A stretch of DNA of 63,773 nt, filler included, from Octopus bimaculoides (lineage: Eukaryota), in assembly GCF_001194135.2 (NCBI RefSeq). It is 7 parts of 6 records of this genome, joined end to end, with 100 filler letters (N's around TTAATTAATTAA, not from the genome) between each part and the next. Parts side by side here need not be neighbours in the genome. Positions count along the whole stretch, not along the records: positions 1 to 22,118 come from NC_069007.1; 6 more parts are not named here. One strand, given 5' to 3'. The position numbers and the translations under genes are program-made. Shown here piece after piece: positions 1,756 to 23,849 of the stretch; the stretch's first letter is position 1; every line of letters starts with the position of its first letter. Under the pieces are notes generated by a model that worked only from the letters and a program-made list of their open reading frames with translations, ran no database searches and was not told the DNA's origin.

Positions 1756-1977
1756 GATAAATATATATTTGTGTGCTTGCAGAAAAAGAAATACATATGT
1801 ATGTGTGTATAAAAACAATATAAACTCCACTTAATTACTCTCTCACCTTATCATTTCATCTGTTTATTAATTTGATTCTTTCTCTTGTCCTTCTGATGTT
1901 TTTTTTTCTTCCAATTCTTGCACCCCACCCACTTTAGGGGGACACCATTTTTTAATATGTCTTAGTTGATTTTTCAG

Positions 1978-2234
1978 ATCAATCAACCAAATAAAGAAGG
2001 TTACACACCTCTGCATCTAGCCTGTGAGAGGGGAAACAAAAACATCGTTCAGTACCTACTTGGTTGTAATGCTGATGTAAATGTGAAGAACCGTGAGGAT
2101 GCAACACCTCTCAGTTTAGCCTGTAAGAAAGATCACCCAGACACTGTTTGTCTGTTACTGCAGATGAGTAATCCTGATTGCAATGTAGTGTACGATGATA
2201 AAGATAACACACCTCTACACTGGGCTATTCAAAC
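1978..2234 (+). CDS. MIB2-like ankyrin/RING gene, internal exon A (ankyrin repeats); gene continues upstream of the window
   Basis: ttttcag acceptor and ac|gtaagt donor. Encodes INQPNKEGYTPLHLACERGNKNIVQYLL...DATPLSLAC...DNTPLHWAIQ (TPLH ankyrin motifs). Confidence 0.92.
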
Positions 2235-2749
2235 GTAAGTCCCCATTGATCTGGAATATCCATATTTGTTTCTTTTGTTTTCAATAATCTTTGATTTTAT
2301 TGAGTCCTTCATGTCATAATCCCATCATGGATCATGGATCCTTCTACTCTCTTTCACACTGTAATGGCAAGGTAATCTACTTCATTAATTAATCGTCACC
2401 ATAATTATTGTTGTTGTTATCTGACTAGATTCTTTACTTCATCTCATCCTCTGTTAATATTACAGATTCAAATTCACTCTCTTCTCACTTTCACTCCATG
2501 TAAAACTCAACATCTCTCTTTCTCTCTCTCTCTCTCGTTAGCAATGTTCATCTTTCTTTTGACCCTGGGCTAAATACAGAATCATCACCTTATATTATTT
2601 AGTTTTGTCTCTATGTTCCTACTGGAATATCTACTGTCACTCTGGAGTTGATAATTTGTAATACCAGTAATATCCAGGGGTCATTTAATAAACTTTTCCC
2701 ACCTCTCTTGTTCTTGTGTCTTATTACTTTGTATTATTCATGACTACTC

Positions 2750-2915
2750 TTTTACTTGTTTCAGTCATTTGACTGCGGCCATGTTGGAGCACCGCCTTTA
2801 GTCGAGCAAATCGACCCCAGGACTTATTCTTTGTAATATTGGTCTCTTTTGCCGAACCGCTAAGTTACGGGGACGTAAACACACCAGCATCGGTTGTTAA
2901 GCGATGTTGGGGGGA

Positions 2916-2991
<76 letters not shown>

Positions 2992-3160
2992 TATCTACGA
3001 CGGACTTCTTTCAGTTTCCGTCTACCGAATCCACTCACAAGGCTTTGGTCAGCCTGAGGCTATAGTAGATGACACTTGCTCAAGGTGCCACACAGTGGGA
3101 CTGAACCCGGAACCATGTGGTTGGTAAGCAAGCTACTTACCACACATCCACTCCTACGCC
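2750..3160 (-). mobile_element. tRNA-derived SINE, family A
   Basis: Reverse-complement match to 21558-21943 (tRNA-like head, (CA)/(TA) spacer, tail ...gctccaacatggccgcagtcaaatgactgaaacaagtaaa). Confidence 0.85.
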
Positions 3161-3548
3161 TATAACATTCAGACTCTTAACATTCGGAGCTTAAAACCTG
3201 CTGAGGTCAACTTGGCCTTCTATCTTTGCAAGGTTGATCAAATGCAATACCAGTCATGTACTGGGCTCCATATAATTATACCCCCATCTCCTAAGTTTCA
3301 CCTCTATATAACAGTTATTTATTGTACCATATATACATTGCTCTGTTTACTCAGGTATGTATATATCGTTGTCTTACTGTGTAATGTGTATGTTAACTAT
3401 ATGGGTGTGTGTGTGTCTAAATAACTGTTGACGCAATTAGGTTTTAGTGACCTAATTACACTTGTTTTACATTAATTAATGACCTAATAATTACTAATAA
3501 TCTCAATTTCTGTGATGCTTGTATGTTTTCTATTTCTTTGATTTTCAG

Positions 3549-3585
3549 GAATCACTATGATATGGCTTTATTGATTCTATCCAAG
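3549..3585 (+). CDS. MIB2-like gene, 37-nt exon B
   Basis: ttttcag acceptor and aag|gttag donor. The phase-2 entry completes T and then reads NHYDMALLILSK, finishing the ankyrin helix started in exon A. Exits in phase 0. Confidence 0.85.
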
Positions 3586-3834
3586 GTTAGTTGTCATTCT
3601 TTTTCACTTGTTTCAGTTGTATGACTGGCCATGCTGAAGCACTGCCTTTAAGGGTTTTATTCAAACAAGTCGACCTCAGGACTTATTCTATCAATCTCTT
3701 TTGCTGAACTACTGCATTACAGGGAGCACAAATACACTAACAATGGTTGTCAAATGATGTATATGTATATATATATATATATACATATGTATATATGTAT
3801 ATGTATATACTCTTATATATGTATATATATGAGA

Positions 3835-4195
3835 GAGAATCGTGATGTCGTAGGAGAGAAATGTGTCCGCTTGGATGATGGCTCACTTGCACTAAACGAG
3901 GCTGCAAAGATAGAGGTTTGGAGATGCCACTATGAAAGGCTGTTTAATAAAGAGAATGAATGGGAGGAAGAGAGTCTGCTGCATGTCGACCCAACAGAGG
4001 GACCAGCTATCCTAATTGACATTACCTTGGTAGATAAAGCAATCAAGATTATGAAGACAGGGAAAGCCCTCGGCCCATCAGGAATCACTGCTGAGATGCT
4101 CAAAATATCTGGCAGTGTTGGCTATAGCCTAGTCACCCGTATAGTCAATCAGGTAATACATGAAGGAGTCATACCCAATGACTGGTGTAGCAGGT
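3835..4195 (+). mobile_element. RTE-type non-LTR retrotransposon ORF fragment (tether/pre-RT region)
   Basis: Encodes VWRCHYERLFN...KAIKIMKTGKALGPSGITAEMLK...IPNDW, the typical KAxGPxGIxAE...IPxDW region. Confidence 0.85.
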
Positions 4196-4326
4196 CGACT
4201 TCACTGACAAGCATAAAATGTACATGATCAGTTTGATCAAGTGCTCAATAGAAAACAGTAATGGCATATTAATATCCATCATAATTTCCATGTAAATTTT
4301 TGTCTTCTATTTTTACCTCTACAAAG

Positions 4327-4533
4327 CACATGGTGAAATTTGATACGGAGAACAAAGATGGAATGACACCATTGCTCCTTGCTGTCTCTGAGGGTCACCT
4401 CAGATTAATCCAACAATTCATTTCAAAAGGAGCAAATATAAACGCTGAGAATGCTGAAAAAGAAAACTGCCTGCACTACGCTGTAAAGAATTATTTTCAT
4501 TCTGAGGAGAAGTCCATAGATATTTTAGATGAG
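4327..4533 (+). CDS. MIB2-like gene, exon C (ankyrin repeats)
   Basis: Pyrimidine tract plus aag acceptor, and gag|gtaagt donor. Encodes HMVKFDTENKDGMTPLLLAVSEGH...ENCLHYAV...DILDE. The acceptor position is less certain than the donor. Confidence 0.88.
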
Positions 4534-5029
4534 GTAAGTTTTAAAATTGTTTGTGAATATATAAGAGATGGAAGCAGATCTAGTTTCTCTGTATAACCCT
4601 AGTTATATTATGTAACTAACAATATTCCATCAACTTCAACCATCAAAGAGATAGCTCTTTCACTGTAGAGAATGTAACCCATCTCAGATGTTGGCCATAT
4701 ACACACATCCACAACAGTGTGAAGGGGAGCTGATTTACTGAACAGAGGAGATATTATTCCTAATAATCAAAAATTCAGGATAATGGAAATGACAACTTTT
4801 ATAGCTCTGGTGCCATGATAAATCACCCAGTTCATTCTATGAAGTATTTTATGATTGAAACATCTCCCCTTTCACACTTCTTGTACACAACATATACCCA
4901 CTGATTTCTTGTGGATAGTTCATAACAATGTTGAATTCTTGAACACTTGAAAGTGAGTGTAAAGAAGATCCTTTGTGAGTTTCCTGTACTTAAGCTTTGT
5001 ATGTTCGATTATATATATCATCATTATCA

Positions 5030-5350
5030 TCATCATTGTTTAACGTCCGCTTTCCATGCTAGCATGGGTTGGACGGTTTGACTGAGGACTGGTGAACCAG
5101 ATGGCTACACCAGGCTCCAATCTGATTTGGCAGAGTTTGTACAGCTGGATGCCCTTCCTAACGCCAACCACTCCGAGAGTATAGTGGGTGCTTTTACGTG
5201 CCACCGGCAGGAGGTACTGGCAATGGCCACATTCGAAATGGTGTATTTTACATGCCACCTGCACACGGGCCAGTCCAGCGGCACTGGCAACGATCTCGCT
5301 CGAATGTCTTTTCACATGCCACTGGCACAAGTGCCAGGAAGGCAACGTTG
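5030..5350 (-). mobile_element. RTE 3'-UTR/tail repeat (short element family)
   Basis: Reverse-complement match to 56960-57270 and to the end of the LINE at about 11850-12015. Other copies at about 7975-8150, 14205-14480, 16085-16200, 16395-16490 and 50655-50790. Confidence 0.8.
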
Positions 5351-5357
5351 GTAACAG

Positions 5358-5392
<35 letters not shown>

Positions 5393-5946
5393 TTATACGT
5401 ACACAAAGGTACCAGCATCTAATGATCAGAAGATTTGATGCTTTGATGGTATTTATTATCAACTTTTGCAGAATTCAAGCAACTCTCTGATTTCCATATG
5501 AATAAAGGCCACTACAGGTGTGTGACAATATTTTGATGGTCATCTGTGTGGTTATAACATCTACTTTGGTAAAAAGAAGCCATTATGACAGTCAAATCTT
5601 ACCCTGTCTGATGGAATTGTTTATCAGACTAACAGTTTGAATGGTTTAGCAACTACAATGTATTGGTGTGCTGCCTCAACTGTGATACCAGTTCTTACTT
5701 TTACTTCCCCTTCATCATCTAAAGATGTTTCTTCATTAATAATGGAAACATTATTGATATGTTTGGATATGTCTTTGTGGTGTTGGTCATGTTATGTCTG
5801 AAGAAATTTCCATGTTGTTCTGTGTTAGTTCTGATATAACATATATTATTTGTTGTCATGTTGTTGTGTTACAGTCATATATAAAATACTCTTCCATCAG
5901 TATTTCTTTTGGTATGGCTTGTTGGCTTTATCAAACCAGCTATATA

Positions 5947-7175
5947 TTGGGTTGGCAACTAAGTTCCCGCTGTTTTTTTAATCTAAATTTTTTAAAAGGT
6001 TTAATAAAAAATAACAACTAATTAATTAATAATGTATTCACCCTTGTTGTTTACAACTTCTTCCCCACGTTCAACAAGATCTTCAATACCTCGTTGGTAG
6101 AAATCACCCGATTTTGACTCTCCTACCAAGCTCTCAATTCTGCATCAGTATTGAACGAAACTCAGTGCATAGCATTTGAAAGAGATCGAAAGAAGTGGAA
6201 ATCCGTTGGTGCCAAATCAGGAGAATACAGCGGGTGTGGCAGCACTTCCCAGCCATGCATTTGAGTGGCTTCCTTGGTCATATTGGCGATATGAAGGCAG
6301 GCGTTGTCGTGCAGCAGAACTCCATGCTGCCAACTTTCTCTTGAATAGCCATGTTGAGTTGTTCCATCCGTTGAACTGTTTGGTTCTGTTCAAGCAATTC
6401 ATAATGGAAAGTCTCTTCCCAGTCCCACCATACGCACAACATCGTTTTACGCGGATGAAGATCTTGTTTCACGCGTGGTGTCGCTTGTTTACCGGGGTTA
6501 AACCATTCCTTACACTGCTTCATATTCATGTACAGGCACCATTTTTCGTCGCCAGTAACGATTCAGTAAAGAAATCGTTGCTTGTGTCCATGAGTTGAGC
6601 AGTGACAAGCAAGCAAACCAGTGGAGATTGTGGCTCGTTGATTTTTGTTGTTGTCACTTAAAGTATGCGGAACCCATGCTCCATACTTCTGAACCTTTCC
6701 CATTGAGTGAAGATGCTTCAATATAGCAGTGTGGGAGCATTCCATTTTCTCTTCCAGTTCCCTTGTCATTTGACGAGAATTTTTGTGCAAAAGTTGGTTT
6801 AATCGCTCTTCATTGAACTCAACTGGACAGCAAGAACGAGGTGCGTCTTTGAGGTCAAAATTTCCATTTTTGAACTTAGTATACCAATAACGAGCGGTTC
6901 TTTCAGCTATGGCACCCTCTCCATACACAGCACAAATGTCACAAGCTGCTTTTGCAGCTTTAGAACCTTAATTAAAAACAAAAAGGAGGTGTTGAAAATG
7001 CTCGTTTTTCTTATACTTGACATTCCATTTTAATGATCTGAAAATAAACAAAATTTAACTAAAATTAATTAGAAAAAAAACAAAATAGATTCCAAAATAA
7101 TTCGAAACTAGAATTCTCAAAAAAAAAAATAGATTCCAAAATTTAAAAACAGCGGGAATTTAGTTGCCAACCCAA
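5947..7175 (-). mobile_element. Near full-length decayed mariner (DD34D) transposon in an intron of the MIB2-like gene
   Basis: TIRs ttgggttggcaactaagttcccgctgttttt / aaaaacagcgggaatttagttgccaacccaa with TA on both sides. Broken minus-strand transposase starting at ATG 7028 with WVPHTL, IVTGDEKW, MLCVWWD and YSPDLAP motifs. Confidence 0.95.
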
Positions 7176-7315
7176 TACATAAGTTCTTGTGTTTTATCAT
7201 TGTGATATTTGTTCCATTATATTTCCTATATTTGACACGATGCTATGATTTTGTTTACCTCTAATATATATTTGTGTAATACTAAACTCATCGTTTTATA
7301 TTTCACTATTTGTAG

Positions 7316-7515
7316 TTCTCCTTTAAGCTCTCTTTGAACAAAGATGACAGGCTTTCTGGAACAGTAGTAGCCTGTTATCTAGCACATAGTGGAGCCGACT
7401 TTTACCACGAAAACGATAAAAAGGAGATCCCATTGGATCACATAGCGGATAACAATACAAAAGAGAAAATCAAAACATTATTCCCACAACCATTACAACC
7501 ACCATCACCACCACG
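7316..7515 (+). CDS. MIB2-like gene, exon D (terminal ankyrin-like repeat)
   Basis: tttgtag acceptor and cg|gtaagt donor. VACYLAHSGADFYHENDKKEIPLDHI resembles the ACFLAxxGAD...N...PLDL segment that precedes the RINGs in Mind bomb proteins. Confidence 0.88.
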
Positions 7516-8167
7516 GTAAGTATTCGCTAGGTATAACGAGATAAACCTGTACATCTTGCATTTTGTCTATAATTGTGTTTATATGTTTTAGTTTTAATCC
7601 TACCAATACATTATACTATCATTAGTGTCTTGACCAAAGGCCACACAACAATAGAAAGAAGAACAATAAACAGAAAATACAGTTGTTAGAACACTATCTT
7701 AATTACATTCACATGATTTGCTGTGTTGACTGTCCACCTCCCCTACCTCTCTTAATTCCCTATTTTAAAGATCTGTGACCATCAGGAAAATTTAGTACTA
7801 AATAATGAAGTGAATGAACATATTTTGAAATTGTTACTGAAAAGAAAGTAGAATTTATTTATCTACCAACATTTTTCTATCTCTTTTCTCTGTCCCAATC
7901 CGTCATCATCCTGTAAGGTTTCTTAAAAGAAATATGATTAACAAATACATACGAACAGTGCATATCATCAAACATCCATTTTCCATGCTGGCATGGGTTG
8001 GATGGTTTGACTGAAAACTGGTAAGCTGGTGAGCTGCACCAAGTTCCAATCTGATTTGGCATGGTTTCTACAACTGGATGCTCTTCCTGTCACCAACTAC
8101 TCCAAGAGTGTAGTGGGTGCATTTTATGTACCACTGGCATTGGTGCCAGGGCTTAACAGGTCCTCTC

Positions 8168-8199
<32 letters not shown>

Positions 8200-8465
8200 T
8201 TCTACGTACATATATACATGCATAATGAAATTCCATTATGCAGCTGAGGAGTACATTTTCATTGTACATTTTATGTAGTGTTCTCACTACATAAATAAAT
8301 GGAGCTTGTATGAAACGTGCGTACTGCTATAACCTATTGAATTTTTGTTGCTTTTCTTCAAATTTTATTCACCAAATCTCTTGATTTTGTTTTTGGTTTT
8401 TACCCTACCAAATTCTGGTGCCTCAAACATTTTAAGTACCACATTTAATCTTTTGATTAAATCTA

Positions 8466-8496
<31 letters not shown>

Positions 8497-8970
8497 TATA
8501 NNNNNNNNNNNNNNNNNNNNNNNNNNNNNNNNNNNNNNNNNNNNNNNNNNNNNNNNNNNNNNNNNNNNNNNNNNNNNNNNNNNNNNNNNNNNNNNNNNNN
8601 NNNNNNNNNNNNNNNNNNNNNNNNNNNNNNNNNNNNNNNNNNNNNNNNNNNNNNNNNNNNNNNNNNNNNNNNNNNNNNNNNNNNNNNNNNNNNNNNNNNN
8701 NNNNNNNNNNNNNNNNNNNNNNNNNNNNNNNNNNNNNNNNNNNNNNNNNNNNNNNNNNNNNNNNNNNNNNNNNNNNNNNNNNNNNNNNNNNNNNNNNNNN
8801 NNNNNNNNNNNNNNNNNNNNNNNNNNNNNNNNNNNNNNNNNNNNNNNNNNNNNNNNNNNNNNNNNNNNNNNNNNNNNNNNNNNNNNNNNNNNNNNNNNNN
8901 NNNNNNNNNNNNNNNNNNNNNNNNNNNNNNNNNNNNNNNNNNNNNNNNNNNNNNNNNNNNNNNNNNNNNN

Positions 8971-9203
8971 TCTTCCACCACAACTTTCTCTCACTCTTAC
9001 TTCCTGTTTCTGTTGTGCCTGTAATTCAAAGGGTCAGCCTTGCCACACAGTGTCACGCTGAATATCCCCGAGAACTACGTTAAGGGTACACGTGTCTGTG
9101 GAGTGCTCAGCCACTTGCACGTTAATTTCACGAGCAGGCTGTTCCATTGATCGGATCAACTGGAACCCTCGACATCGTAAGCGATGGAGTGCCAACAACA
9201 ACA
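8971..9203 (+). mobile_element. SINE family C, 3' part
   Basis: Matches the reverse complement of 52232-52608 and ends in a (caa)n tail. Confidence 0.8.
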
Positions 9204-9605
9204 ATTTTATAAGCACATCAGCTGATAGTACAGTAGTGAATTCAAAAATGTGGCCAAAGTGGCATGATGATGGATAATCTTGTGAGATTTTGCCAAGTCA
9301 TCTGCTAGATGTGAAAACTGTAGTGTGTCAATACCTAGAGAAGTTATACATTCAATATATGGTGACTGATAGAGGATATATGCCTGGATGTATGTCTCTA
9401 GACAGCTTCCAGTAGAGTAATATTCTAGACAAAATGGGGGTTCCTGGTTGAAGAAGCATGTATAACTTTAAATAGATAGCTTGCGGATGGCAGACGCAGG
9501 TCTTACTGAGTGATGCTTAGGCACCTTTGAGCTTTTTGATGATTTTAGAGATGTGGTTTGCTCATCACAGTTCAATGTTGACATTAATACCTTTTCATTA
9601 CACAG

Positions 9606-9766
9606 ATTTTCATGTAAGTGGTGTAACGAAGATGAGCCCACTACGAAGATCTATTCCTGTAAGCAAGCTCATTTGGTGTTATGCAATGATTGTTTTATCA
9701 AAACTGGGCGTCCAGAATGCACCTCCTGTCAAAAGCCCTTAAACTTAAAAAGGAAAAGTAAACTTG
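9606..9766 (+). CDS. MIB2-like gene, exon E (RING finger 1)
   Basis: cacag acceptor (phase 2, matching exon D) and g|gtaag donor. Encodes CKWC-x11-CKQAH-x3-CNDC-x8-CTSC. Confidence 0.88.
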
Positions 9767-9881
9767 GTAAGAATATTATTTAATGATCTGTCTATTTATC
9801 TCATTGATTTTTATAAGTGTGGAATAATGTACTTATGTTGTTTTGTGAACCCAGGTATGCCATAATCTGGCATATTTAAGA

Positions 9882-10505
9882 TTAACCCTTTAGCATTTAA
9901 AATGGCCATATCCAGCCAAAATATTGTATTTGTTTTATGTTCAAACCAGCTAGATCTGGCCTCTTGCACCAACCCTACAATCTCATTCTAAAAATAAAGA
10001 ATCACTTCATCAAAATCTCAAATCTACACGATAATGCTTGATAAATTCAAAACCATGTGAATAAATAAGCATGTAGGGAAGTGGTTATACACCATTAGGT
10101 GTACTCCGCTCTCGTACATTAAATTTCTTGAATAAAACAACAGGAACGCAGACTCTAAACTATCAACACAACAATATTTATTACAATAGAATTCGGCAGC
10201 ACTTCGCCCTTTGGTTACTGAGACGCCGTCAATGAAGTTCGTGGTTATTTGTGTAGCTCCAGTGCTGGGTTGTGAGAGAGCTCTGTTGTGACGTCTAGGC
10301 TCTACGAAGGTCAGCTAGCAAGAGGGTGAAAGAAGCGGGAACGTTTGGATATCGATGACTACGCATGCGCATGAGACTCTTCCTGTATTCCTTCCGGAAC
10401 TAGTCCCTGCGCAAGCGTGGATAAACTTTCCGGAAATGTCATCTGCTATTAGGTGTCACTACAAGCATTACATTTGACCAAATAATCTGAATGTTAAAGA
10501 GTTAA
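9882..10505. mobile_element. piggyBac-like MITE (interrupted by a solo LTR)
   Basis: TTAA-CCCTTTAGCATT ... AATGTTAAAGAG-TTAA termini. Related copies at 17296-17400 and 17732-17951. Confidence 0.8.
10072..10463 (-). mobile_element. Solo LTR (392 bp)
   Basis: TGTAG...CTACA inverted termini and a 4-bp TSD AGCA (10068-10071, 10464-10467). The related MITE copy at about 17905-17920 has a single AGCA (empty site). Minus-strand AATAAA at 10177-10182. Confidence 0.85.
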
Positions 10506-11199
10506 AAGGCGTCTTTTCTCTGTGGTACTATGTCTATCACTACATATTCTCTTTACCCAATTGAAAGATTTGTCAGCATCAAACTAATTGATTGACACCT
10601 CAAAGTAAATGGTGACTAACTGAAATGTTGATAGACCTCCATGGTTCTATTTGTAAACACTAACTTTTTACAGTCAGTTTTGAGTGATTAGAAGCAATTA
10701 ATGATTTATCAGTATCTTGAGAAATTGATAAAGACAATGGTACAGTGGTGACATTTTTAGAGAAAACATTTCGTTTTCAGACAAATTTCTTTATTGCCTT
10801 TTTTTTATTTATTAGTATTTTTAATGCTGATTATGGAAATAACTTTTGTTTTTATCCATTTCCAATATTTTACTTGAAATTTTATTTTGAAGACCCCATT
10901 TTTGGCAAAAATGAGATAACTTGTCTTTCCATATTTTTTTTATTTATTGCTTTTTTTTTTCCAGCTTTATCATCAAAAGGAAAGGGGAATTACACATTTA
11001 TTTTACTCTTTTTTTTTAGCATGTCTTCTCAAAAATCTTTTTTATATATATATTTATTGCATTTACCTTCAGGGAAATTGAATTGCTTGACATGTAGCAA
11101 AGAAGAGTCTTGACATGTGGCAGATGTGCAGGTACAGTAAACATCAAGAATATATAAAAAATAGACTCCTTCATATGCGGGTGGGGGTGGGGGGTATCC

Positions 11200-12015
11200 C
11201 GAGAAGTAGTAGACAGTTTCTGTTACTTAGGTGACTAAATTAGTAGTTGGAGTTGTTCTGAAAGCATAGCTGTTAGAATAAGAATAGGCTGGGTGAAGTT
11301 CAGAGAGCAACTACCTCTGTTAGTAATGAAGGGCTTCTTCCTCGGAGTGAAATGCAGACTGTACGATGCCTTTGTAGGAACAGTTATGCTACATAGCAGT
11401 GAGACATGGGTTGTAACTACTGAGAATATGGGAAGGCTTGAAAGAAATGAAACCAGAATGCTTCCCAGGGTGGGTAATGTTAGTGTGCATATGACAGAGT
11501 GTAAGTGATCTGAGAATAAATCTAGGTATATGAGGCATCAGGTGTAGTGTGCAAGAGAGAAGACTGCACTGGTATGTAATGTGTATGAATGAAGACAGTT
11601 GCATCAAGAGGTGCTGATCTCTCATTGTAAAGGGAACATGTGGAAGGGGTACACCAACAAGATGTGGGATGAAGTGATGAGAAAGGATCTACAAATGTTA
11701 GGATTTACCGAGGGATGATGGGACTGCAACTCCTGGGGGTTTGCCGTACTTGAAAAGGCATGTCAAGCTAAGTAAATGAGTGGCTGCCTTTGCATATAGG
11801 CTTGTCCTCTGCAGCTGAGCATCCCTAATCTTGTGGGCCCATAGGTGTTGGTGCTGCATAAAAAGCACCCAGTACACTTTGTGAAGTGGTTGGCATTAGG
11901 AAAGGCACCCAGCCATAGAAACCATGCCTGAACAGTCCTTCAGCTGGTCAGCTCCTGTCAAACCATCCAACCCATACCAACATGGAAAATGGACATTAAA
12001 TGATGATGATAATGA
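11200..12015 (+). mobile_element. RTE-type LINE 3' end (decayed) with 3' UTR and (gat)n tail
   Basis: Encodes EVVDSFCYLGD, WVKFREQLPLL, MLHSSETW and RLERNE. Ends ...catggaaaatggacattaaatgatgatgat. Confidence 0.85.
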
Positions 12016-18154: not shown

Positions 18155-18160
18155 TTTATT
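18155..18160 (-). terminator. Candidate SART1 polyadenylation signal
   Basis: Minus-strand AATAAA about 370 nt past the stop codon. Confidence 0.35.
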
Positions 18161-18526
18161 TTATATATTAAGTAAAAATTTACATAGTCTCCAGAAAACT
18201 GGAAAATCTAGAAATCTAGTCCCTGGCTTGCTAGATATTCGATCCAATAGTGTAGTAAGTTGTAAGTCGGATAGTACAGAAGTACAGTAGTATGTCAGAG
18301 AATATAGAGTACAGTCAAGTAATGTGTTTTGGAGAGGACAATGCAGTAAGTATAAGTCAAAACTCAAGTCACTATAAACAACATTTACATGTCGAAGTTG
18401 ATATTAAATAATAATAATTAATGGAAACAAAATGTAGGGTTTTCTATGTTTTAGTTTGAAAACAAAGAAAAGGAGAAATTATTGCAAAAAAAAAAAGAAA
18501 AAGAGAAAAAAAGACATTTAAAAAGT

Positions 18527-20866
18527 CTATTTAACAATGGTATTAGCAGACATTCCTTTGTTACCACTGAGAATGACATAAGGAGTTCTTTCTTGCTTTT
18601 GTTTTTCTTGTAGAAGAGTCAATGTATTAAGAGGAGTGTCTGTGGAACTCATCTGTTTCATCAATTGTTCTTCTTCTAATTTCTTCATGCGTTTCTCAGT
18701 CTTTTTCTTGCCTGGCCCCTTGCCATGGAAACGGTGAGAGAGCTGACGAAACGCTTCTTTTTCATTTAACAATCGTCCAGAATCGTCGGCATATTCTAAC
18801 CGAACGTCTGGCTTGTATCCTTCTTTCTCTTTGAAGTCTACCAACATCCCCGTGTACCGATCTCTCTTGCGGTACTTTTCGTCAAGGTCATCATATCGTT
18901 TGTCCTCAATAGAATAATGAATAGCTTCGAGACCGCTGTGTTTGGGACCACTGGGCATTCGTTTGCTCTGATTCTCCAGGTAACCCTTTTTCTGTGCTAC
19001 TTGTAAAGCTGCTGCAAGTCCCATATTTATAGCTGGTTCTTCATCCAAGACTGCATTTTCCTCTTTCACAATATTAACAGGTTTAGTATCAATATCAACC
19101 TCGTTCCACTGACTCGACAGATCCTCTTCATCTTGGATTTTTTTCTTACGTTCCATCAATTCCAATTCTAAATCCAAAAAGGCATCGCGTTCTTCATCAC
19201 GATTGCCAGCTAAACCATAAGTTGGAATGTCACCTAAAGCACGACAAAATTCTGACGTAGCATTTAAAATAATGTCACTTTTTTTCATCTCACTATCAAA
19301 TGCATTGGAACCCAGCGACTGGGTGTGGTGCAATGTTTTGGCGATTTCGTCAGGAACTGTCCGTTCTCTCCTTTGTTTCAACTTCCGCACTTTATCTAAA
19401 GTGGAGTAAAGTTCATTCATTGCATCATCTTCATCTACGACATAACTGTTGTAGATGTCGCTGTCGTCGTGCCCCAGAATGGTCGTTTCTTCTGGCTGCT
19501 GTTGATCTATGTCCATATCTTCCACCTCTATTCTAGGAGAAACCGACTCTTTACCATCTTCTGTAGGATTCTCAGTTTTTATTTTCATTTTCCGATTTCC
19601 AAGGTCATTACCATTCCTGGCATCACCGACCTCATCAGGCATGTTCAATAAATCATCTGGTTTTAATATTTTCTTGCGGATTTTTCTCTTCACCTTTTTA
19701 ACTTTGTTAAATTTAGCTGATTCCACTTCCTCATTAGTGTAATATTCCCTGGCTAGAGTTGACAACTGTACAAGGTTTTGACTCTGTTGTTTTAATTCCT
19801 TACGAATTCTTTCAAGATCTCGTTCAGCAGATGGAACATATTTACCACCAGATCCAAGTTCAAAAGATGTAATTTTCTTACCATAAATTTCCTCATCATA
19901 TTTACTCAACATGGCTTCTTTTTGGGGTTGGAAATCATCAGTAAATTCTTCATCATCATATGGGGTATATTCAGGTTTCTTCTTTTTAATCTCGTTATTT
20001 TTTATAGCAACTTCATCTTCATGTAACCTGGGATTAACAAGAACATCTTGGTCTTCAGTTAAAACTTGGTTGTCTTTAAGAGTCAAAATAACGGTACTAC
20101 CTTCTTTGAAACTGTCCAAATTATGTTCAACTTTGAAACCTTTTAGATCTCTAGACGAATAATTCTTCTTCTTCTTATCTTTATTAAATTCTTCTTCCAT
20201 TAAACTACCAATTCCAAAGTCTTCGTCCATCTGATCCAACATTTTCGCCGTTTTCTCTGCCATTTCGCGATCGTGTTCCAGCTTTCGACTTTTCTCAATC
20301 CATTTCTTCACATCGTCGTCATCCGCTCCGTCTCCCAACGTTTTGATCTTGCTAAACTTGTCATAAATTTTCCTCTTCTCTCGCAGAAGTTCGGTTTTCT
20401 CCCGGATCTTATTCGTTCGTTTCATTTCACCCAAATTCACCGCAGGCACATGGACATCTTCAGATTTCTTCGCGACTGTCTCAGTAGTTCCAATGTCTTC
20501 TCCACCAGCACTGGCGGCCCCAGAACCGGAACCACTAACATCTAAGGGCCTCATCCCAAGCTTTATCCTTAACCTATTCGCCTCTTCGATACTCAAAGAA
20601 CAGGTATTACTGTTGCTACCACTGGTATTATTATTATTGTTATTACCAGCGGTAGAAGCAGCGCCCCCGGAGGAACCACTGTTGAACGGTGTTTCCTTCC
20701 TCTCTGAACTACTAATATCATGTTTATGAGAAGATTTCTTACTTTCATCTTTGTCCCGCCGCTTCTTGCTTTGATGCTCCTTGTTTCGTGACCGTGACGA
20801 AGATCTCCGCCTGTGTTTATGTCGGTGTTCTCGGTCAGATTTGTGTTTCTTCGACGAGGAACCCAT
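18527..20866 (-). CDS. SART1: U4/U6.U5 tri-snRNP-associated protein 1 (SART1/Snu66), 779 aa, intronless CDS
   Basis: Uninterrupted ORF with an RS/RH-rich N-terminus, the Hub1-interaction (HIND) motif LSIEEANRLRIKLGMRPL, and conserved SART-1 blocks (LTLKD..VL, ILNATSEFCRALGDIPTYG, EAFRQLSHRFHGKGPGKKKTEKR). Start context is aaaATGG. Confidence 0.97.
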   Translation of the reverse strand: MGSSSKKHKSDREHRHKHRRRSSSRSRNKEHQSKKRRDKDESKKSSHKHDISSSERKETPFNSGSSGGAASTAGNNNNNNTSGSNSNTCSLSIEEANRLRIKLGMRPLDVSGSGSGAASAGGEDIGTTETVAKKSEDVHVPAVNLGEMKRTNKIREKTELLREKRKIYDKFSKIKTLGDGADDDDVKKWIEKSRKLEHDREMAEKTAKMLDQMDEDFGIGSLMEEEFNKDKKKKNYSSRDLKGFKVEHNLDSFKEGSTVILTLKDNQVLTEDQDVLVNPRLHEDEVAIKNNEIKKKKPEYTPYDDEEFTDDFQPQKEAMLSKYDEEIYGKKITSFELGSGGKYVPSAERDLERIRKELKQQSQNLVQLSTLAREYYTNEEVESAKFNKVKKVKRKIRKKILKPDDLLNMPDEVGDARNGNDLGNRKMKIKTENPTEDGKESVSPRIEVEDMDIDQQQPEETTILGHDDSDIYNSYVVDEDDAMNELYSTLDKVRKLKQRRERTVPDEIAKTLHHTQSLGSNAFDSEMKKSDIILNATSEFCRALGDIPTYGLAGNRDEERDAFLDLELELMERKKKIQDEEDLSSQWNEVDIDTKPVNIVKEENAVLDEEPAINMGLAAALQVAQKKGYLENQSKRMPSGPKHSGLEAIHYSIEDKRYDDLDEKYRKRDRYTGMLVDFKEKEGYKPDVRLEYADDSGRLLNEKEAFRQLSHRFHGKGPGKKKTEKRMKKLEEEQLMKQMSSTDTPLNTLTLLQEKQKQERTPYVILSGNKGMSANTIVK

Positions 20867-20948
20867 TTTGTGTCACTCAACAAAAGATCACAGGACCGGA
20901 CTGACTGGATCATTTATTGCCTGCATCTCTCATCGGTCAAAATTAAAT
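20867..20948 (-). other. SART1 5'-UTR portion of the coding exon (probable 3' splice site at 20949-20950)
   Basis: Minus strand reads ...gacttttttctctttatggtag|atttaa: a pyrimidine tract plus AG, preceded by very AT-rich intron-like sequence. Confidence 0.55.
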
Positions 20949-21557
20949 CTACCATAAAGAGAAAAAAGTCATTAATATTTTACGAATAAAATATAATAAA
21001 GTAATTTATATTCTATTTATTATACGTAAAATATCGATTAATTGATATAATTTATTTAAAAAAATGTATTTTTGTTTGCCGCAGTTAAGGCAAGGGAGCT
21101 AACTCGTACATGACTTTACAATTTTATTTTAAAAATTATTTTTTCTTTGAAGAAATAAATTTTTGTAGGTTTTTCTCGGAATTTTATTGATTTTCAACGT
21201 CGGGAGATGGTTAGGTGAGGGATATAGTAAATTATACTGATCGCTGTACGAGACTGCTAATTTAGATTATCTAATTAAATTAGTAAAAGTAACGGATTCA
21301 GAACACGAAGAGCGTTTCTCTTAAGCACACACACATACACACACATGTACATAGACACATGCTCACACGTACTCATATACACACACACACTCGCATGTAC
21401 ACTTACGCATACAGGAGCACACACTTTACTCACACGTATGTACACACGCATACACATAAACACTAACGCTCGCATACATACACGCACACACGTCTATTGT
21501 AATATGATCATTTCCCTTTGAATGGCAGATCGAGAAATTAATTTTTTGTAACTAAAC

Positions 21558-21943
21558 TAGGCGCAGAAGTGGCTATGTGGTAAGTAGCTTGCTTACCAAC
21601 CACATGGTTCCGGGTTCATTCCCACTGCGTGGCACCTTGGGCAAGTGTCTTCTACTATAGCCTAGGGCCGACCAAAGCCTTGTGAGTGGATTTGGTAGAC
21701 GGAAACTGAAAGAAGCCCGTCGTATATATGTGTGTGTATATGTTTGTGCGTCTGTGTTTGTCCCCTCCCCACCATCGCTTGACAGCCGATGGTGGTGTGT
21801 TTACGTCCCCGTAACTTAGCGGTTCGGCAAAAGAGACCGATAGAATAAGTACTAGGATTCCAAAGAATAAGTCCTGGGGTCGATTTGCTCGACTAAAGGC
21901 GGTGCTCCAGCATGGCCGCAGTCAAGTGACTGAAACAAGTAAA
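21558..21943 (+). mobile_element. tRNA-derived SINE, family A (full length)
   Basis: Head ggcgcagaagtggctatgtggtaag...ccgggttcattccca, central ccttgggcaagtgtctt, (TG)n spacer and tail. Further copies at about 3600-3755, 39170-39330, 41100-41290, 42319-42677, 49868-50420, 54800-55020 and 55275-55500. Confidence 0.88.
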
Positions 21944-23849
21944 CACTTTCAAACTTCGGACACTGGTGGAATCGGCGGCGTATATTTCGTTTGTCACTGT
22001 TATTTATGACATATTACATCTAAGTTACGTTTGTATGAATAAACGTACGGGTGCGCCCAATTTTGATTCCGAAGTAGGCAAGATTTCCGCCCGTCCCCTC
22101 CCCCACAAATACCCTCTTNNNNNNNNNNNNNNNNNNNNNNNNNNNNNNNNNNNNNNNNNNNNTTAATTAATTAANNNNNNNNNNNNNNNNNNNNNNNNNN
22201 NNNNNNNNNNNNNNNNNNTGTGTGCGCGTGTGTGTGTGCATATTTGTATATCATTATCTTGGTTTGCTATTTTACTGATAATATACATGGAGTTGAACGG
22301 TAATTGAAAACTCCAAACACATACTGAGATTCATTATATTTCTCTCTACTTTGAGAAGATATTTCTTTTAACTGTCTGTTTTCTCCATTATAATGAATAA
22401 ACAAATCTATATTTCTGCACTTTAATTGTAGTGATCAGTAAAAGACTCAGTTTAAATTACTGTCGTCGAATAAATTCCGAATGTATTGTCAAAGAAACAA
22501 ACAGGAGAATTTTGAAGAACAAATTGTCAGAGAAAAATTATAACGTCCAGACATTGCGGTATCTTGGTTGACTCAAGCTCAAAATAGTAGGGACAAAAAC
22601 TCAAATTACACATTATGTCCTTTATAAGTGGTCAAAAGTTTACATGATTGAATCCGAGTAAATCCCGTCCAAAACGAAAACCCTAGGGGTAATGTGTGAA
22701 AATAGCATCGTCTTTAACTTGTAGGATATGTTTTCTTTGAACCGAAATTCCGTTCTTTAACTTCAAATTCTGCTAAGAGAAATATGTTTTTCTTTTTATA
22801 ATTCCAATGACATTTCAAATGAATGTACAATGTCTATGGTAGTGGATTCCCTTAATAGCAACAAAGCCGGAGAGGATATGCTACGGTGTTTGTTTCTAAT
22901 CATAGTTTTCTGTATTGAAACACTGTTAATGATTATTTAAGTGGTGGACTTACTCTGTTGCCTTGTCTGACACCGCCATTCACATACAGTAGCAAGGATT
23001 CCGGTTTCTGTTACGTTCCAGTACTCTCGAAATAGCTGTCAGAGGATAATGGCTACTACTACCTGAAATTTCCATTGTAATAAAAACTAAAAGTTTGAAA
23101 CATCTAGACCCCAAATCTTCTCGATTATAATAAAACTGTACAAAAAAAAAAAAAAAAGACTTCACGCAATACATCGTGAGACAACTGGAGAGTAACTACT
23201 TCTTTCCTTGACCTGCTAGAAATAGCAATGATTTCCTTTTGAAAACACAACCTATCATTCCGGCAAATGAGGGACACATGTTCGAGTAAATTAAGACATA
23301 GGAAAGGCTGGACAACTTGTGATTAAATATAGCATTGCATTGGGGGTAATTAACAATAACGAAAGAACAGTGCCTTATGAAACTTGAATTTAATTTCATT
23401 TAACGTCGACGTTAACCTTATTAATGATTCTGCTAAAACTGTAAGAAATAATACTAGAGTAATTGTATAAAAAAGCGTGAAATACAAAATTAAAATCTGA
23501 TCTCACAATTTGAAAATTTAAAACACTTAACTCTTGCGAATGGCTGTTAATTTTATGTAATTTTTGAGATTTGTTCATCCTTCGCAGGTTATTGAAACTC
23601 CTTCATGAATTCTCCCATAGATTTTATTGCATTTAAACAAAAATTTCATCATTTGTTTTTCCTTTACAATGTCTGCTTATCTTTTGGTCTTTTTCTTATT
23701 ACCAACGTCACGAGTGGATGGAGTAGGTGATACTACTAAAAGGGGTATTTCCTGGGCGCTTTATAATACCAGATCTCCTCATTACTCTAGGTGATTATAC
23801 TTTCGTTGTGGTGAAACCTGACATCCCTGTGGGATAGCAAGTCAACTGT

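What the first reader, a model, noticed from the sequence alone, without database searches (positions are those of the whole stretch)
18527..20866. Intronless SART1: a core spliceosome gene that looks retroposed
Seen: a 2340-nt CDS with no intron, next to a gene with kb-scale introns, with no frameshifts and all hallmark motifs. Known: vertebrate SART1 is multi-exon, and retrogenes typically have an intronless CDS and later gain 5'-UTR introns. Inference: a functional retrogene that may have replaced its parent, or wholesale intron loss. An intronless gene for a splicing factor would escape splicing-based autoregulation.
Basis: partly seen in the sequence, partly recalled or inferred. Interest (0 to 1): 0.7.

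Follow-up and report, generated by a model that had tools for sequence, protein, structure and literature searches.

The report
Intronless SART1 shared by coleoid cephalopods
The octopus gene for the core splicing protein SART1 has no introns in its coding sequence; the same holds in cuttlefish and other coleoids, where it always sits next to the GCSH gene, so it is most likely an ancient reverse-transcribed copy that replaced the original about 20-exon gene.

Summary
Window 18527-20866 (- strand) is one uninterrupted 779-codon ORF. It encodes a full-length SART1/Snu66 (Pfam SART-1 3e-109 plus HIND; human SART1 in tri-snRNP structures 1.5e-154). The window is Octopus bimaculoides chromosome CM046627.1.

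The intronless state is not specific to octopus. O. sinensis, Argonauta hians, Sepia pharaonis and a further decapodiform contig all carry one uninterrupted SART1 ORF. In each of these four it lies head-to-head with GCSH, 0.5-2.6 kb between start codons.

A chiton, a gastropod and two bivalves have 13-18 or more coding-exon blocks over 13-26 kb. Their neighbours are different: an ASB3-like gene head-to-head and NXF1 convergent. In Argonauta the ASB3-like orthologue lies on another contig with no SART1 remnant nearby.

The gene is functional:
- dN/dS is 0.066.
- There is no rate acceleration.
- Only one SART1 per cephalopod appears among the 120 listed hits.
- Cuttlefish contigs that look like transcripts are colinear with the genome.

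Best reading (about 0.6): retrogene replacement in the coleoid stem lineage, with co-option of the GCSH bidirectional promoter. Main rival (about 0.3): cDNA-mediated intron loss in place, followed by rearrangement. This is a new member of a known kind and of moderate interest.

The parts
18527..20866 (-). SART1 (U4/U6.U5 tri-snRNP-associated protein 1 / Snu66) coding sequence: a single exon of 779 codons plus the stop
   Evidence: ORF. Pfam SART-1 and HIND. Human SART1 5o9z_P E 1.5e-154. Identical protein on record for O. bimaculoides. dN/dS 0.066 against O. sinensis.
20867..21469 (-). 5' flank (presumed 5' UTR and promoter side). It is AT-rich and includes a (TG)n-like tract at its distal end.
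   Evidence: It lies inside the 3.3-kb blastn block shared with O. sinensis (87.6% identity overall). The aligned flank itself has 89% mean column identity, against about 67% identity at synonymous sites of the CDS (pS 0.33). The TSS is not mapped. A pyrimidine tract followed by AG about 86 nt upstream of the ATG is kept in both Octopus species, but there is no evidence that it is used as a splice site.
18155..18526 (-). Presumed 3' UTR, up to the first AATAAA (367 nt after the stop)
   Evidence: The first poly(A) signal is at +367. The region is conserved with O. sinensis. No A-rich relic follows it.
1972..11110 (+). Context: the 3' part of the convergent neighbour, an Ank-RING gene (P0121, named 'E3 ubiquitin-protein ligase MIB2' by NCBI) with introns of 1.3-2.8 kb. 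It is not the ancestral neighbour of SART1.
   Evidence: tblastn exon matches. Pfam Ank repeats plus a weak zf-C3HC4_3 match. The closest relatives are octopus paralogues. Similarity to the mollusc ASB3-like gene is only generic, 30-35% with shifting repeat register.

Best explanation
This is the working SART1 gene of coleoid cephalopods and, as far as annotated proteomes show, their only one. It is a processed, single-exon gene. The most likely history is as follows. In the coleoid stem lineage, after the split from the other molluscs sampled and before octopods and decapodiforms diverged, a fully spliced SART1 mRNA was reverse-transcribed. The copy inserted a few hundred bases upstream of the housekeeping gene GCSH, in the opposite orientation. 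There it was driven from the start by the GCSH bidirectional promoter. The roughly 20-exon parent, which lay between an ASB3-like gene and NXF1, then became redundant and was lost. This is retrogene replacement, also called an orphan retrogene.

Shown here: the intronless CDS in five coleoids; GCSH adjacency in four of them; multi-exon genes with different, conserved neighbours in four other molluscs; purifying selection. Inferred: the reverse-transcription step, the promoter co-option, and the timing relative to Nautilus.
For: - Uninterrupted full-length ORFs occur in O. bimaculoides, O. sinensis, Argonauta hians (ORF 9602-12160 of L003, 852 aa), decapodiform contig L004 and Sepia pharaonis (L010 8675-11002).
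- GCSH lies head-to-head upstream in O. sinensis (2.55 kb ATG to ATG), Argonauta (1.67 kb), Sepia (505 bp) and L004 (about 493 bp).
- Chiton, Solemya, Pomacea and Pinctada SART1 span 13-26 kb with 13-18 or more exon blocks.
- In those species an orthologous ASB3-like gene is head-to-head (chiton, Pomacea, Pinctada) and NXF1 is convergent downstream (Solemya, Pinctada). No GCSH lies within 10 kb.
- The Argonauta ASB3-like orthologue (P0239) is colinear over its whole length with Pinctada P0229 (E 9e-105). It lies on a different contig, and tblastn at E<=10 finds no SART1 relic in that 35-kb locus (the ASB3-like gene plus 10 kb on each side).
- Coleoid SART1 proteins form one clade inside molluscs with no rate acceleration.
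- dN/dS is 0.066.
- Only one SART1 per cephalopod species appears among the listed hits.
- Six contigs from independent sequencing runs are colinear with the Sepia genome, and four of them end within 8 nt of each other at the 3' end, as transcripts would.
- The flanking genes keep kb-scale introns, so there is no regional intron loss.
- Precedent: amphioxus SYCP1 is a retrogene replacement with a co-opted bidirectional promoter (PMC5803294).
Against: - None of the five loci has a poly(A) relic at a conserved position, and no target-site duplications were identified. This is expected after more than about 250 My, but it leaves no direct scar of retroposition.
- Coleoid genomes were extensively restructured (PMC9023564 abstract; PMC9068888). 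Loss of the ancestral neighbours would therefore be expected even without retroposition.
- NXF1 and the octopus ASB3-like locus could not be examined.
- Nautilus could not be examined.
- Absence of a parent copy rests on annotated proteomes and one 35-kb Argonauta locus, not on whole-genome searches.
- That the six contigs come from RNA is inferred from their shape, not from run metadata.
Confidence: 0.6

Rival explanations
1. Intron loss in place. A full-length SART1 cDNA recombined with the genomic gene at its original locus and erased all coding introns at once. The rearrangements of the coleoid stem genome then separated it from ASB3-like and NXF1 and placed it next to GCSH.
For: Coleoid genomes were extensively restructured and gained hundreds of new microsyntenies (PMC9023564). 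There is no poly(A) or target-site-duplication scar. Reverse-transcriptase-mediated intron loss by recombination is an established model (PMC3652778).
Against: This needs a full-length conversion that removes about 20 introns without an intermediate. It also needs two breakpoints, one inside a roughly 2-kb bidirectional promoter, rejoined within about 0.5 kb of another gene's start codon without harming either gene. All five coleoids are fully intronless, so no partial states are seen.
Confidence: 0.3
2. The intronless gene is the ancestral mollusc or spiralian state, and the other lineages gained introns.
For: None found.
Against: Chiton (Aculifera) and gastropod and bivalves (Conchifera) all have many exons, with several exon boundaries falling at matching protein positions, for example chiton 306/330, Solemya 306/330 and Pomacea 298/322. 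Coleoids nest inside molluscs.
Confidence: 0.02
3. This is a retrocopy that coexists with an unannotated, expressed multi-exon parent, so it would be a duplicate rather than a replacement.
For: Whole cephalopod genomes could not be searched. Only the best 120 of 568 hits were listed.
Against: Only one SART1 was listed for each of O. bimaculoides, O. sinensis, Argonauta hians and Sepia pharaonis. Purifying selection is strong and there is no rate acceleration, as expected for a sole essential copy. No relic lies beside the Argonauta ASB3-like gene.
Confidence: 0.05

Closest known systems
Human SART1 / yeast Snu66 (U4/U6.U5 tri-snRNP-associated protein 1)
   Same: The whole SART-1 domain and the HIND motif are present. 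The alignment to the human protein seen in tri-snRNP and B-complex cryo-EM structures is near end-to-end. The protein is orthologous to other mollusc SART1 proteins.
   Different: Gene structure only: a single coding exon against 13-18 or more coding-exon blocks in other molluscs. The genomic neighbours also differ.
Amphioxus SYCP1 retrogene replacement (Garstang & Ferrier 2018, PMC5803294)
   Same: A single-coding-exon gene replaces a multi-exon ancestral gene. It lies at a new locus and is the only copy. It is head-to-head with a neighbour (CHIC there, GCSH here), which suggests co-option of a bidirectional promoter.
   Different: Here the gene is an essential, ubiquitously needed core spliceosome component rather than a meiosis gene. 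The event is shared by a whole subclass (coleoids). Promoter sharing is inferred from a 0.5-kb spacing and has not been tested.
'Orphan' retrogenes (Ciomborowska et al. 2013, PMC3548309)
   Same: A functional retrogene whose parent has been lost from the genome.
   Different: That survey covered human, chicken and worm. No cephalopod or SART1 case was found in the library searches.
Coleoid-specific microsyntenies (Schmidbaur et al. 2022, PMC9023564)
   Same: The GCSH-SART1 pair is tightly linked in both octopodiforms and decapodiforms and was not seen in the four other molluscs examined. That is the pattern of a novel coleoid microsynteny.
   Different: This pair probably arose by insertion of a processed gene rather than by chromosomal rearrangement. 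Whether it appears in their catalogue was not checked.

Membership tests
SART1/Snu66 family (Pfam PF03343) | Full-length SART-1 domain above the Pfam gathering score | tested here: met
   366.6 bits against a cut-off of 31.5; profile positions 2-585 of 585.
SART1/Snu66 family (Pfam PF03343) | N-terminal HIND motif | tested here: met
   PF19252, 31.2 bits against a cut-off of 25; residues 90-110.
SART1/Snu66 family (Pfam PF03343) | Sequence homology to the experimentally placed tri-snRNP subunit | tested here: met
   Human 5o9z_P E 1.5e-154 over residues 6-779; yeast Snu66 5nrl_E E 7e-6.
SART1/Snu66 family (Pfam PF03343) | Physical association with the U4/U6.U5 tri-snRNP in this organism | not testable with these tools
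   This needs biochemistry.
Retrogene replacement / orphan retrogene | Intronless coding sequence where orthologues in outgroups are multi-exonic | tested here: met
   Five coleoids have a single ORF. Four other molluscs have 13-18 or more exon blocks.
Retrogene replacement / orphan retrogene | Location unrelated to the parental locus | tested here: met
   The ancestral neighbours ASB3-like and NXF1 are replaced by GCSH. The Argonauta ASB3-like orthologue is on another contig. Caveat: coleoid genome reshuffling could give the same pattern.
Retrogene replacement / orphan retrogene | Parental multi-exon copy absent | tested here: inconclusive
   One SART1 per cephalopod species among the listed hits. 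No relic in the 35-kb Argonauta ASB3-like locus. No whole-genome search was possible.
Retrogene replacement / orphan retrogene | Poly(A) tract remnant and target-site duplications | tested here: inconclusive
   No A-rich tract lies at a conserved position downstream in any of the five loci. Target-site duplications were not searched for. At an age of more than about 250 My such scars are expected to be erased, so their absence is uninformative.
Retrogene replacement / orphan retrogene | The copy is functional (constrained and expressed) | tested here: met
   dN/dS 0.066. No rate acceleration. Six transcript-like contigs in a Sepia species (that they are RNA is inferred).

The most novel reading that the evidence does not exclude
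The SART1 retrocopy landed in the GCSH promoter and was expressed at once as one arm of a bidirectional housekeeping promoter, which allowed an essential spliceosome gene to be swapped for a processed copy. It would be one of a set of retrogene replacements that accompanied the reorganisation of the coleoid stem genome. One hint is that the vacated head-to-head slot beside ASB3-like in Argonauta now holds another single-exon gene (SPATA24-like). If so, reverse transcription, and not only chromosomal rearrangement, helped to build coleoid-specific microsyntenies.
Probability: 0.2. Interest if true: 0.6.

Novelty: new member of a known kind. Interest (0 to 1): 0.4.

Why it matters
Essential, dosage-sensitive genes of core machinery are rarely replaced by processed copies. 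Here the replacement is shared by a whole animal subclass, and there is a clear candidate for how the copy gained expression: a 0.5-kb head-to-head spacing with GCSH. That makes it a clean natural case for studying promoter co-option by retrogenes. It also gives a discrete rare genomic change (intronless SART1 beside GCSH) that marks Coleoidea and can be scored in Nautilus and Vampyroteuthis. It further raises the question of whether retroposition contributed to the coleoid-specific gene linkages described in 2022. It changes nothing about what SART1 does.

Tried and rejected
1. Shared Ank neighbour as evidence of conserved synteny. Both octopus and chiton have an ankyrin-repeat gene beside SART1. 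This was rejected. The octopus gene is an Ank-RING protein whose nearest relatives are octopus paralogues. It matches the mollusc ASB3-like gene only at a generic 30-35% with shifting repeat register. Its orientation also differs (convergent rather than divergent).
2. Search for the 'empty' parental site. The ASB3-like orthologue was found only for Argonauta. Its upstream neighbour is a SPATA24-like single-exon gene and then a peroxidase, not NXF1, so a clean ASB3-like/NXF1 junction could not be shown.
3. NXF1 as a query.
4. Hemichordate outgroup locus (P0027). It is not on record.
5. Poly(A) relic. None was found.
6. The octopus Ank-RING gene downstream of SART1 in other coleoids. There was no hit within 10 kb, so conservation of the downstream neighbour is undetermined.
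7. GCSH in O. bimaculoides itself. It is hidden by an assembly gap (L001 5890-8748), which is also where this window piece ends.
8. ARAGORN on the tRNA-like head of the upstream SINE: no call.
9. Pfam on transposon-like ORFs in the window: no hits.
10. Literature. Nothing was found on intronless SART1 or cephalopod retrogene replacement. The 'SART1' hit in PMC3747384 is the silkworm LINE of the same name. Nothing was found on SART1 autoregulation by splicing.

Full report
**1. The observation**

On the - strand of the window a single ORF runs from the ATG at 20866 to the stop at 18527-18529. It is 779 codons long with no internal stop. Stop codons make up 5.6% of codons in this AT-rich window, so 779 open codons by chance has P of about 2e-20.

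The product is a complete SART1:
- Pfam SART-1 covers the whole profile (positions 2-585 of 585, E 3.4e-109), and the HIND motif is present.
- Residues 6-779 align to human SART1 as seen in tri-snRNP structures (5o9z_P, E 1.5e-154). The C-terminus aligns to yeast Snu66.

The exact protein is on record for Octopus bimaculoides GCA_001194135.2, chromosome CM046627.1, at about 17.4 Mb, as a gene whose range equals its CDS.

The 'gene with kb-scale introns' next to it is also real. It is an Ank-RING gene (P0121) on the + strand, convergent with SART1. Its exons match at 1972-2235, 4306-4548, 7316-7477, 9613-9771 and 11072-11110.

**2. How widely the intronless state is shared**

The coding sequence is uninterrupted in every coleoid locus that could be fetched:
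- O. sinensis: 780 aa, 92% identical.
- Argonauta hians: the annotation starts too late. The ORF is open from an upstream MGSSKKHK start at L003 9602 and gives 852 aa.
- A 580-kb ENA contig, L004: 775 aa, 65% identical to octopus.
- Sepia (Acanthosepion) pharaonis: annotated as only 333 aa, but tblastn shows one 775-codon ORF at L010 8675-11002.

The L004 protein is 87% identical to a cuttlefish-cluster protein, so it is taken to be a decapodiform.

In a neighbour-joining tree on 662 ungapped columns these proteins form one clade inside the molluscs. Their identity to a hemichordate outgroup (0.48-0.49) lies within the range of other molluscs (0.46-0.51), so there is no rate acceleration.

**3. 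Polarity**

Four non-cephalopod molluscs have long, split genes:
- chiton Liolophura, 22.8 kb
- Solemya, 26.5 kb
- Pomacea, 13.3 kb
- Pinctada, 13.7 kb

Each shows 13-18 high-identity exon blocks (more at lower stringency), and several boundaries fall at matching protein positions. Both Aculifera and Conchifera are represented, so the multi-exon gene is the ancestral mollusc state. The coleoid state is derived.

**4. Neighbourhood**

In chiton, Pomacea and Pinctada the gene head-to-head with SART1, about 2 kb away, is an Ank-SOCS protein of 590-609 aa. The copies are mutually orthologous, exon by exon at 50-60% identity. NCBI names relatives of it ASB3-like or ASB2-like. In Solemya and Pinctada NXF1 is the convergent downstream neighbour.

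None of this holds in coleoids. There the head-to-head partner is GCSH (Pfam GCV_H). The distance from the GCSH start codon to the SART1 start codon is:
- 2.55 kb in O. sinensis
- 1.67 kb in Argonauta
- 505 bp in Sepia pharaonis
- about 493 bp in L004

GCSH exon 1 is recognisably conserved (MASS...VVERYY) across all four. In O. bimaculoides an assembly gap (L001 5890-8748) covers the place where GCSH exon 1 should lie, and this gap is also where the window piece ends.

I first suspected that the octopus Ank gene was the ancestral Ank neighbour. It is not. Its closest relatives are octopus paralogues with a RING finger. It resembles the ASB3-like gene only at the generic repeat level.

The true ASB3-like orthologue was found in Argonauta (P0239). 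It is colinear with Pinctada P0229 over its whole length (E 9e-105). It lies on a different contig (BAAFZT010000100.1), and there is no SART1 similarity at E<=10 anywhere in the 35-kb locus. The head-to-head slot there is occupied by a SPATA24-like single-exon gene. Given the positions within the two contigs, SART1 and ASB3-like are at least about 1.6 Mb apart in that assembly.

**5. Function**

- Between the two Octopus species dN is 0.028 and dS is 0.43, so dN/dS is 0.066. At deeper nodes synonymous sites are saturated while proteins stay 65-80% identical.
- Only one SART1 per cephalopod species appears among the 120 listed hits.
- Six contigs from six sequencing runs encode the cuttlefish-type protein. 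They are 2.5-2.9 kb long and 97% identical to the S. pharaonis genome.
- All six are colinear with the genome from up to 184 nt upstream of the ATG to about 385 nt past the stop.
- Four of them end within 8 nt of each other at the 3' end.

This is the shape of assembled transcripts. I infer, but cannot prove from metadata, that they are RNA. They indicate expression, and they show no intron in the 5' UTR (at least its proximal 184 nt), the CDS or the 3' UTR of the cuttlefish gene.

**6. Mechanism**

Two histories fit.

(a) Retroposition of a spliced mRNA next to GCSH, followed by loss of the parent. This is retrogene replacement.

(b) Recombination of a full-length cDNA with the gene in place, followed by rearrangement.

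Points in favour of (a):
- All of roughly 20 introns are gone in every coleoid, with no intermediates.
- Flanking genes keep their introns.
- Both ancestral neighbours are gone.
- The new junction lies within 0.5 kb of another gene's start codon, the kind of site where a retrocopy gains a promoter for free. Amphioxus SYCP1 is a precedent (PMC5803294).

Points in favour of (b), or at least against certainty:
- There is no poly(A) or target-site-duplication scar, although none is expected at this age.
- Coleoid genomes were extensively restructured (PMC9023564; PMC9068888), so loss of synteny alone is weak evidence.

I put (a) at about 0.6 and (b) at about 0.3.

The event predates the split between octopodiforms and decapodiforms and postdates the split of cephalopods from the other molluscs sampled. 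Nautilus could not be examined.

**7.

A pyrimidine tract followed by AG about 86 nt upstream of the octopus ATG is conserved between the two Octopus species. Nothing shows that it is used as a splice site, and the cuttlefish contigs argue against a 5'-UTR intron there.

The remark about escaping splicing-based autoregulation is untested. The search for SART1 together with autoregulation or poison exons returned no paper that mentions SART1 among those listed.

**8. Comparison and novelty**

The protein is an ordinary SART1 orthologue. The gene history belongs to a known class: retrogene replacement, or orphan retrogenes (PMC5803294, PMC3548309). No paper in the library describes it for SART1 or for cephalopods.

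It is therefore a new member of a known kind. What sets it apart is that the gene is an essential core spliceosome component, that the state is fixed across a whole subclass, and that the GCSH pairing gives a concrete hypothesis for promoter capture. Interest is moderate, 0.4.

**9. Limits**

- Flanks were limited to 10 kb.
- No whole eukaryotic genome could be scanned.
- The organism and library type of the Logan runs and of the ENA contig are not given by the tools.

Noticed in passing
window 21550-22000 (+) and 2751-3162 (-): Two copies (80% identical) of a SINE of about 430 nt with a tRNA-like head, one of them about 700 nt upstream of the SART1 ATG. The same element gives 11 hits in the O. 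sinensis locus and 4 in Argonauta, but none in the decapodiform, chiton or Pomacea loci, so it is octopod-specific. ARAGORN does not call the head as a tRNA.
   Followed up: partly
window 8501-8970; L001 5890-8748 (just beyond window end 22118): There are assembly gaps (runs of N). The second one hides the place where GCSH exon 1 should lie in O. bimaculoides, so the GCSH-SART1 pairing in this species is inferred from relatives.
   Followed up: yes
L003 9602-10000 (Argonauta) and L010 8675-10000 (Sepia pharaonis): The public SART1 gene models are truncated at the N-terminus. Argonauta is annotated as 719 aa but the ORF is 852 aa, with expanded low-complexity Ser/Asn/Gly tracts. S. pharaonis is annotated as 333 aa but the ORF is 775 aa. 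In Sepia an antisense RING-finger gene model (189 aa, L010 8942-21002) overlaps the SART1 ORF and looks like an annotation artefact or a nested arrangement.
   Followed up: partly
L009 7036-7746 (-), Argonauta hians: A single-exon SPATA24-like gene (236 aa, coiled-coil) sits head-to-head, 2.25 kb away, with the ASB3-like gene. This is exactly where SART1 sits in other molluscs. It has no similarity to SART1. It might be a second processed gene using the vacated promoter side.
   Followed up: partly
window 1972-11110 (+): The convergent neighbour P0121 (NCBI name 'MIB2') belongs to a small Ank-repeat plus C-terminal RING family. Its best hits are other octopus proteins (37-39% identity), followed by unnamed sequences. 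No clear orthologue in other molluscs was listed. Its last annotated exon (11072-11110) lies in low-complexity sequence and may be mis-called.
   Followed up: partly
window 3754-4227 (+), 11239-11505 (+): These ORFs lie in an intron of the Ank-RING gene and downstream of it. By eye their translations look like fragments of non-LTR retrotransposon proteins, but Pfam gives no hit, so this is unconfirmed.
   Followed up: partly
(hit tables): SART1 and the ASB3-like gene are also on the same chromosome-scale record in Littorina saxatilis (71,654,694 bp). In Tegillarca granosa, SART1 and an Ank-repeat protein that matches the ASB3-like query over part of its length carry locus tags three apart (KUTeg_014060 and 014063). 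This suggests that the ancestral linkage extends to more gastropods and bivalves. Distances were not checked.
   Followed up: no
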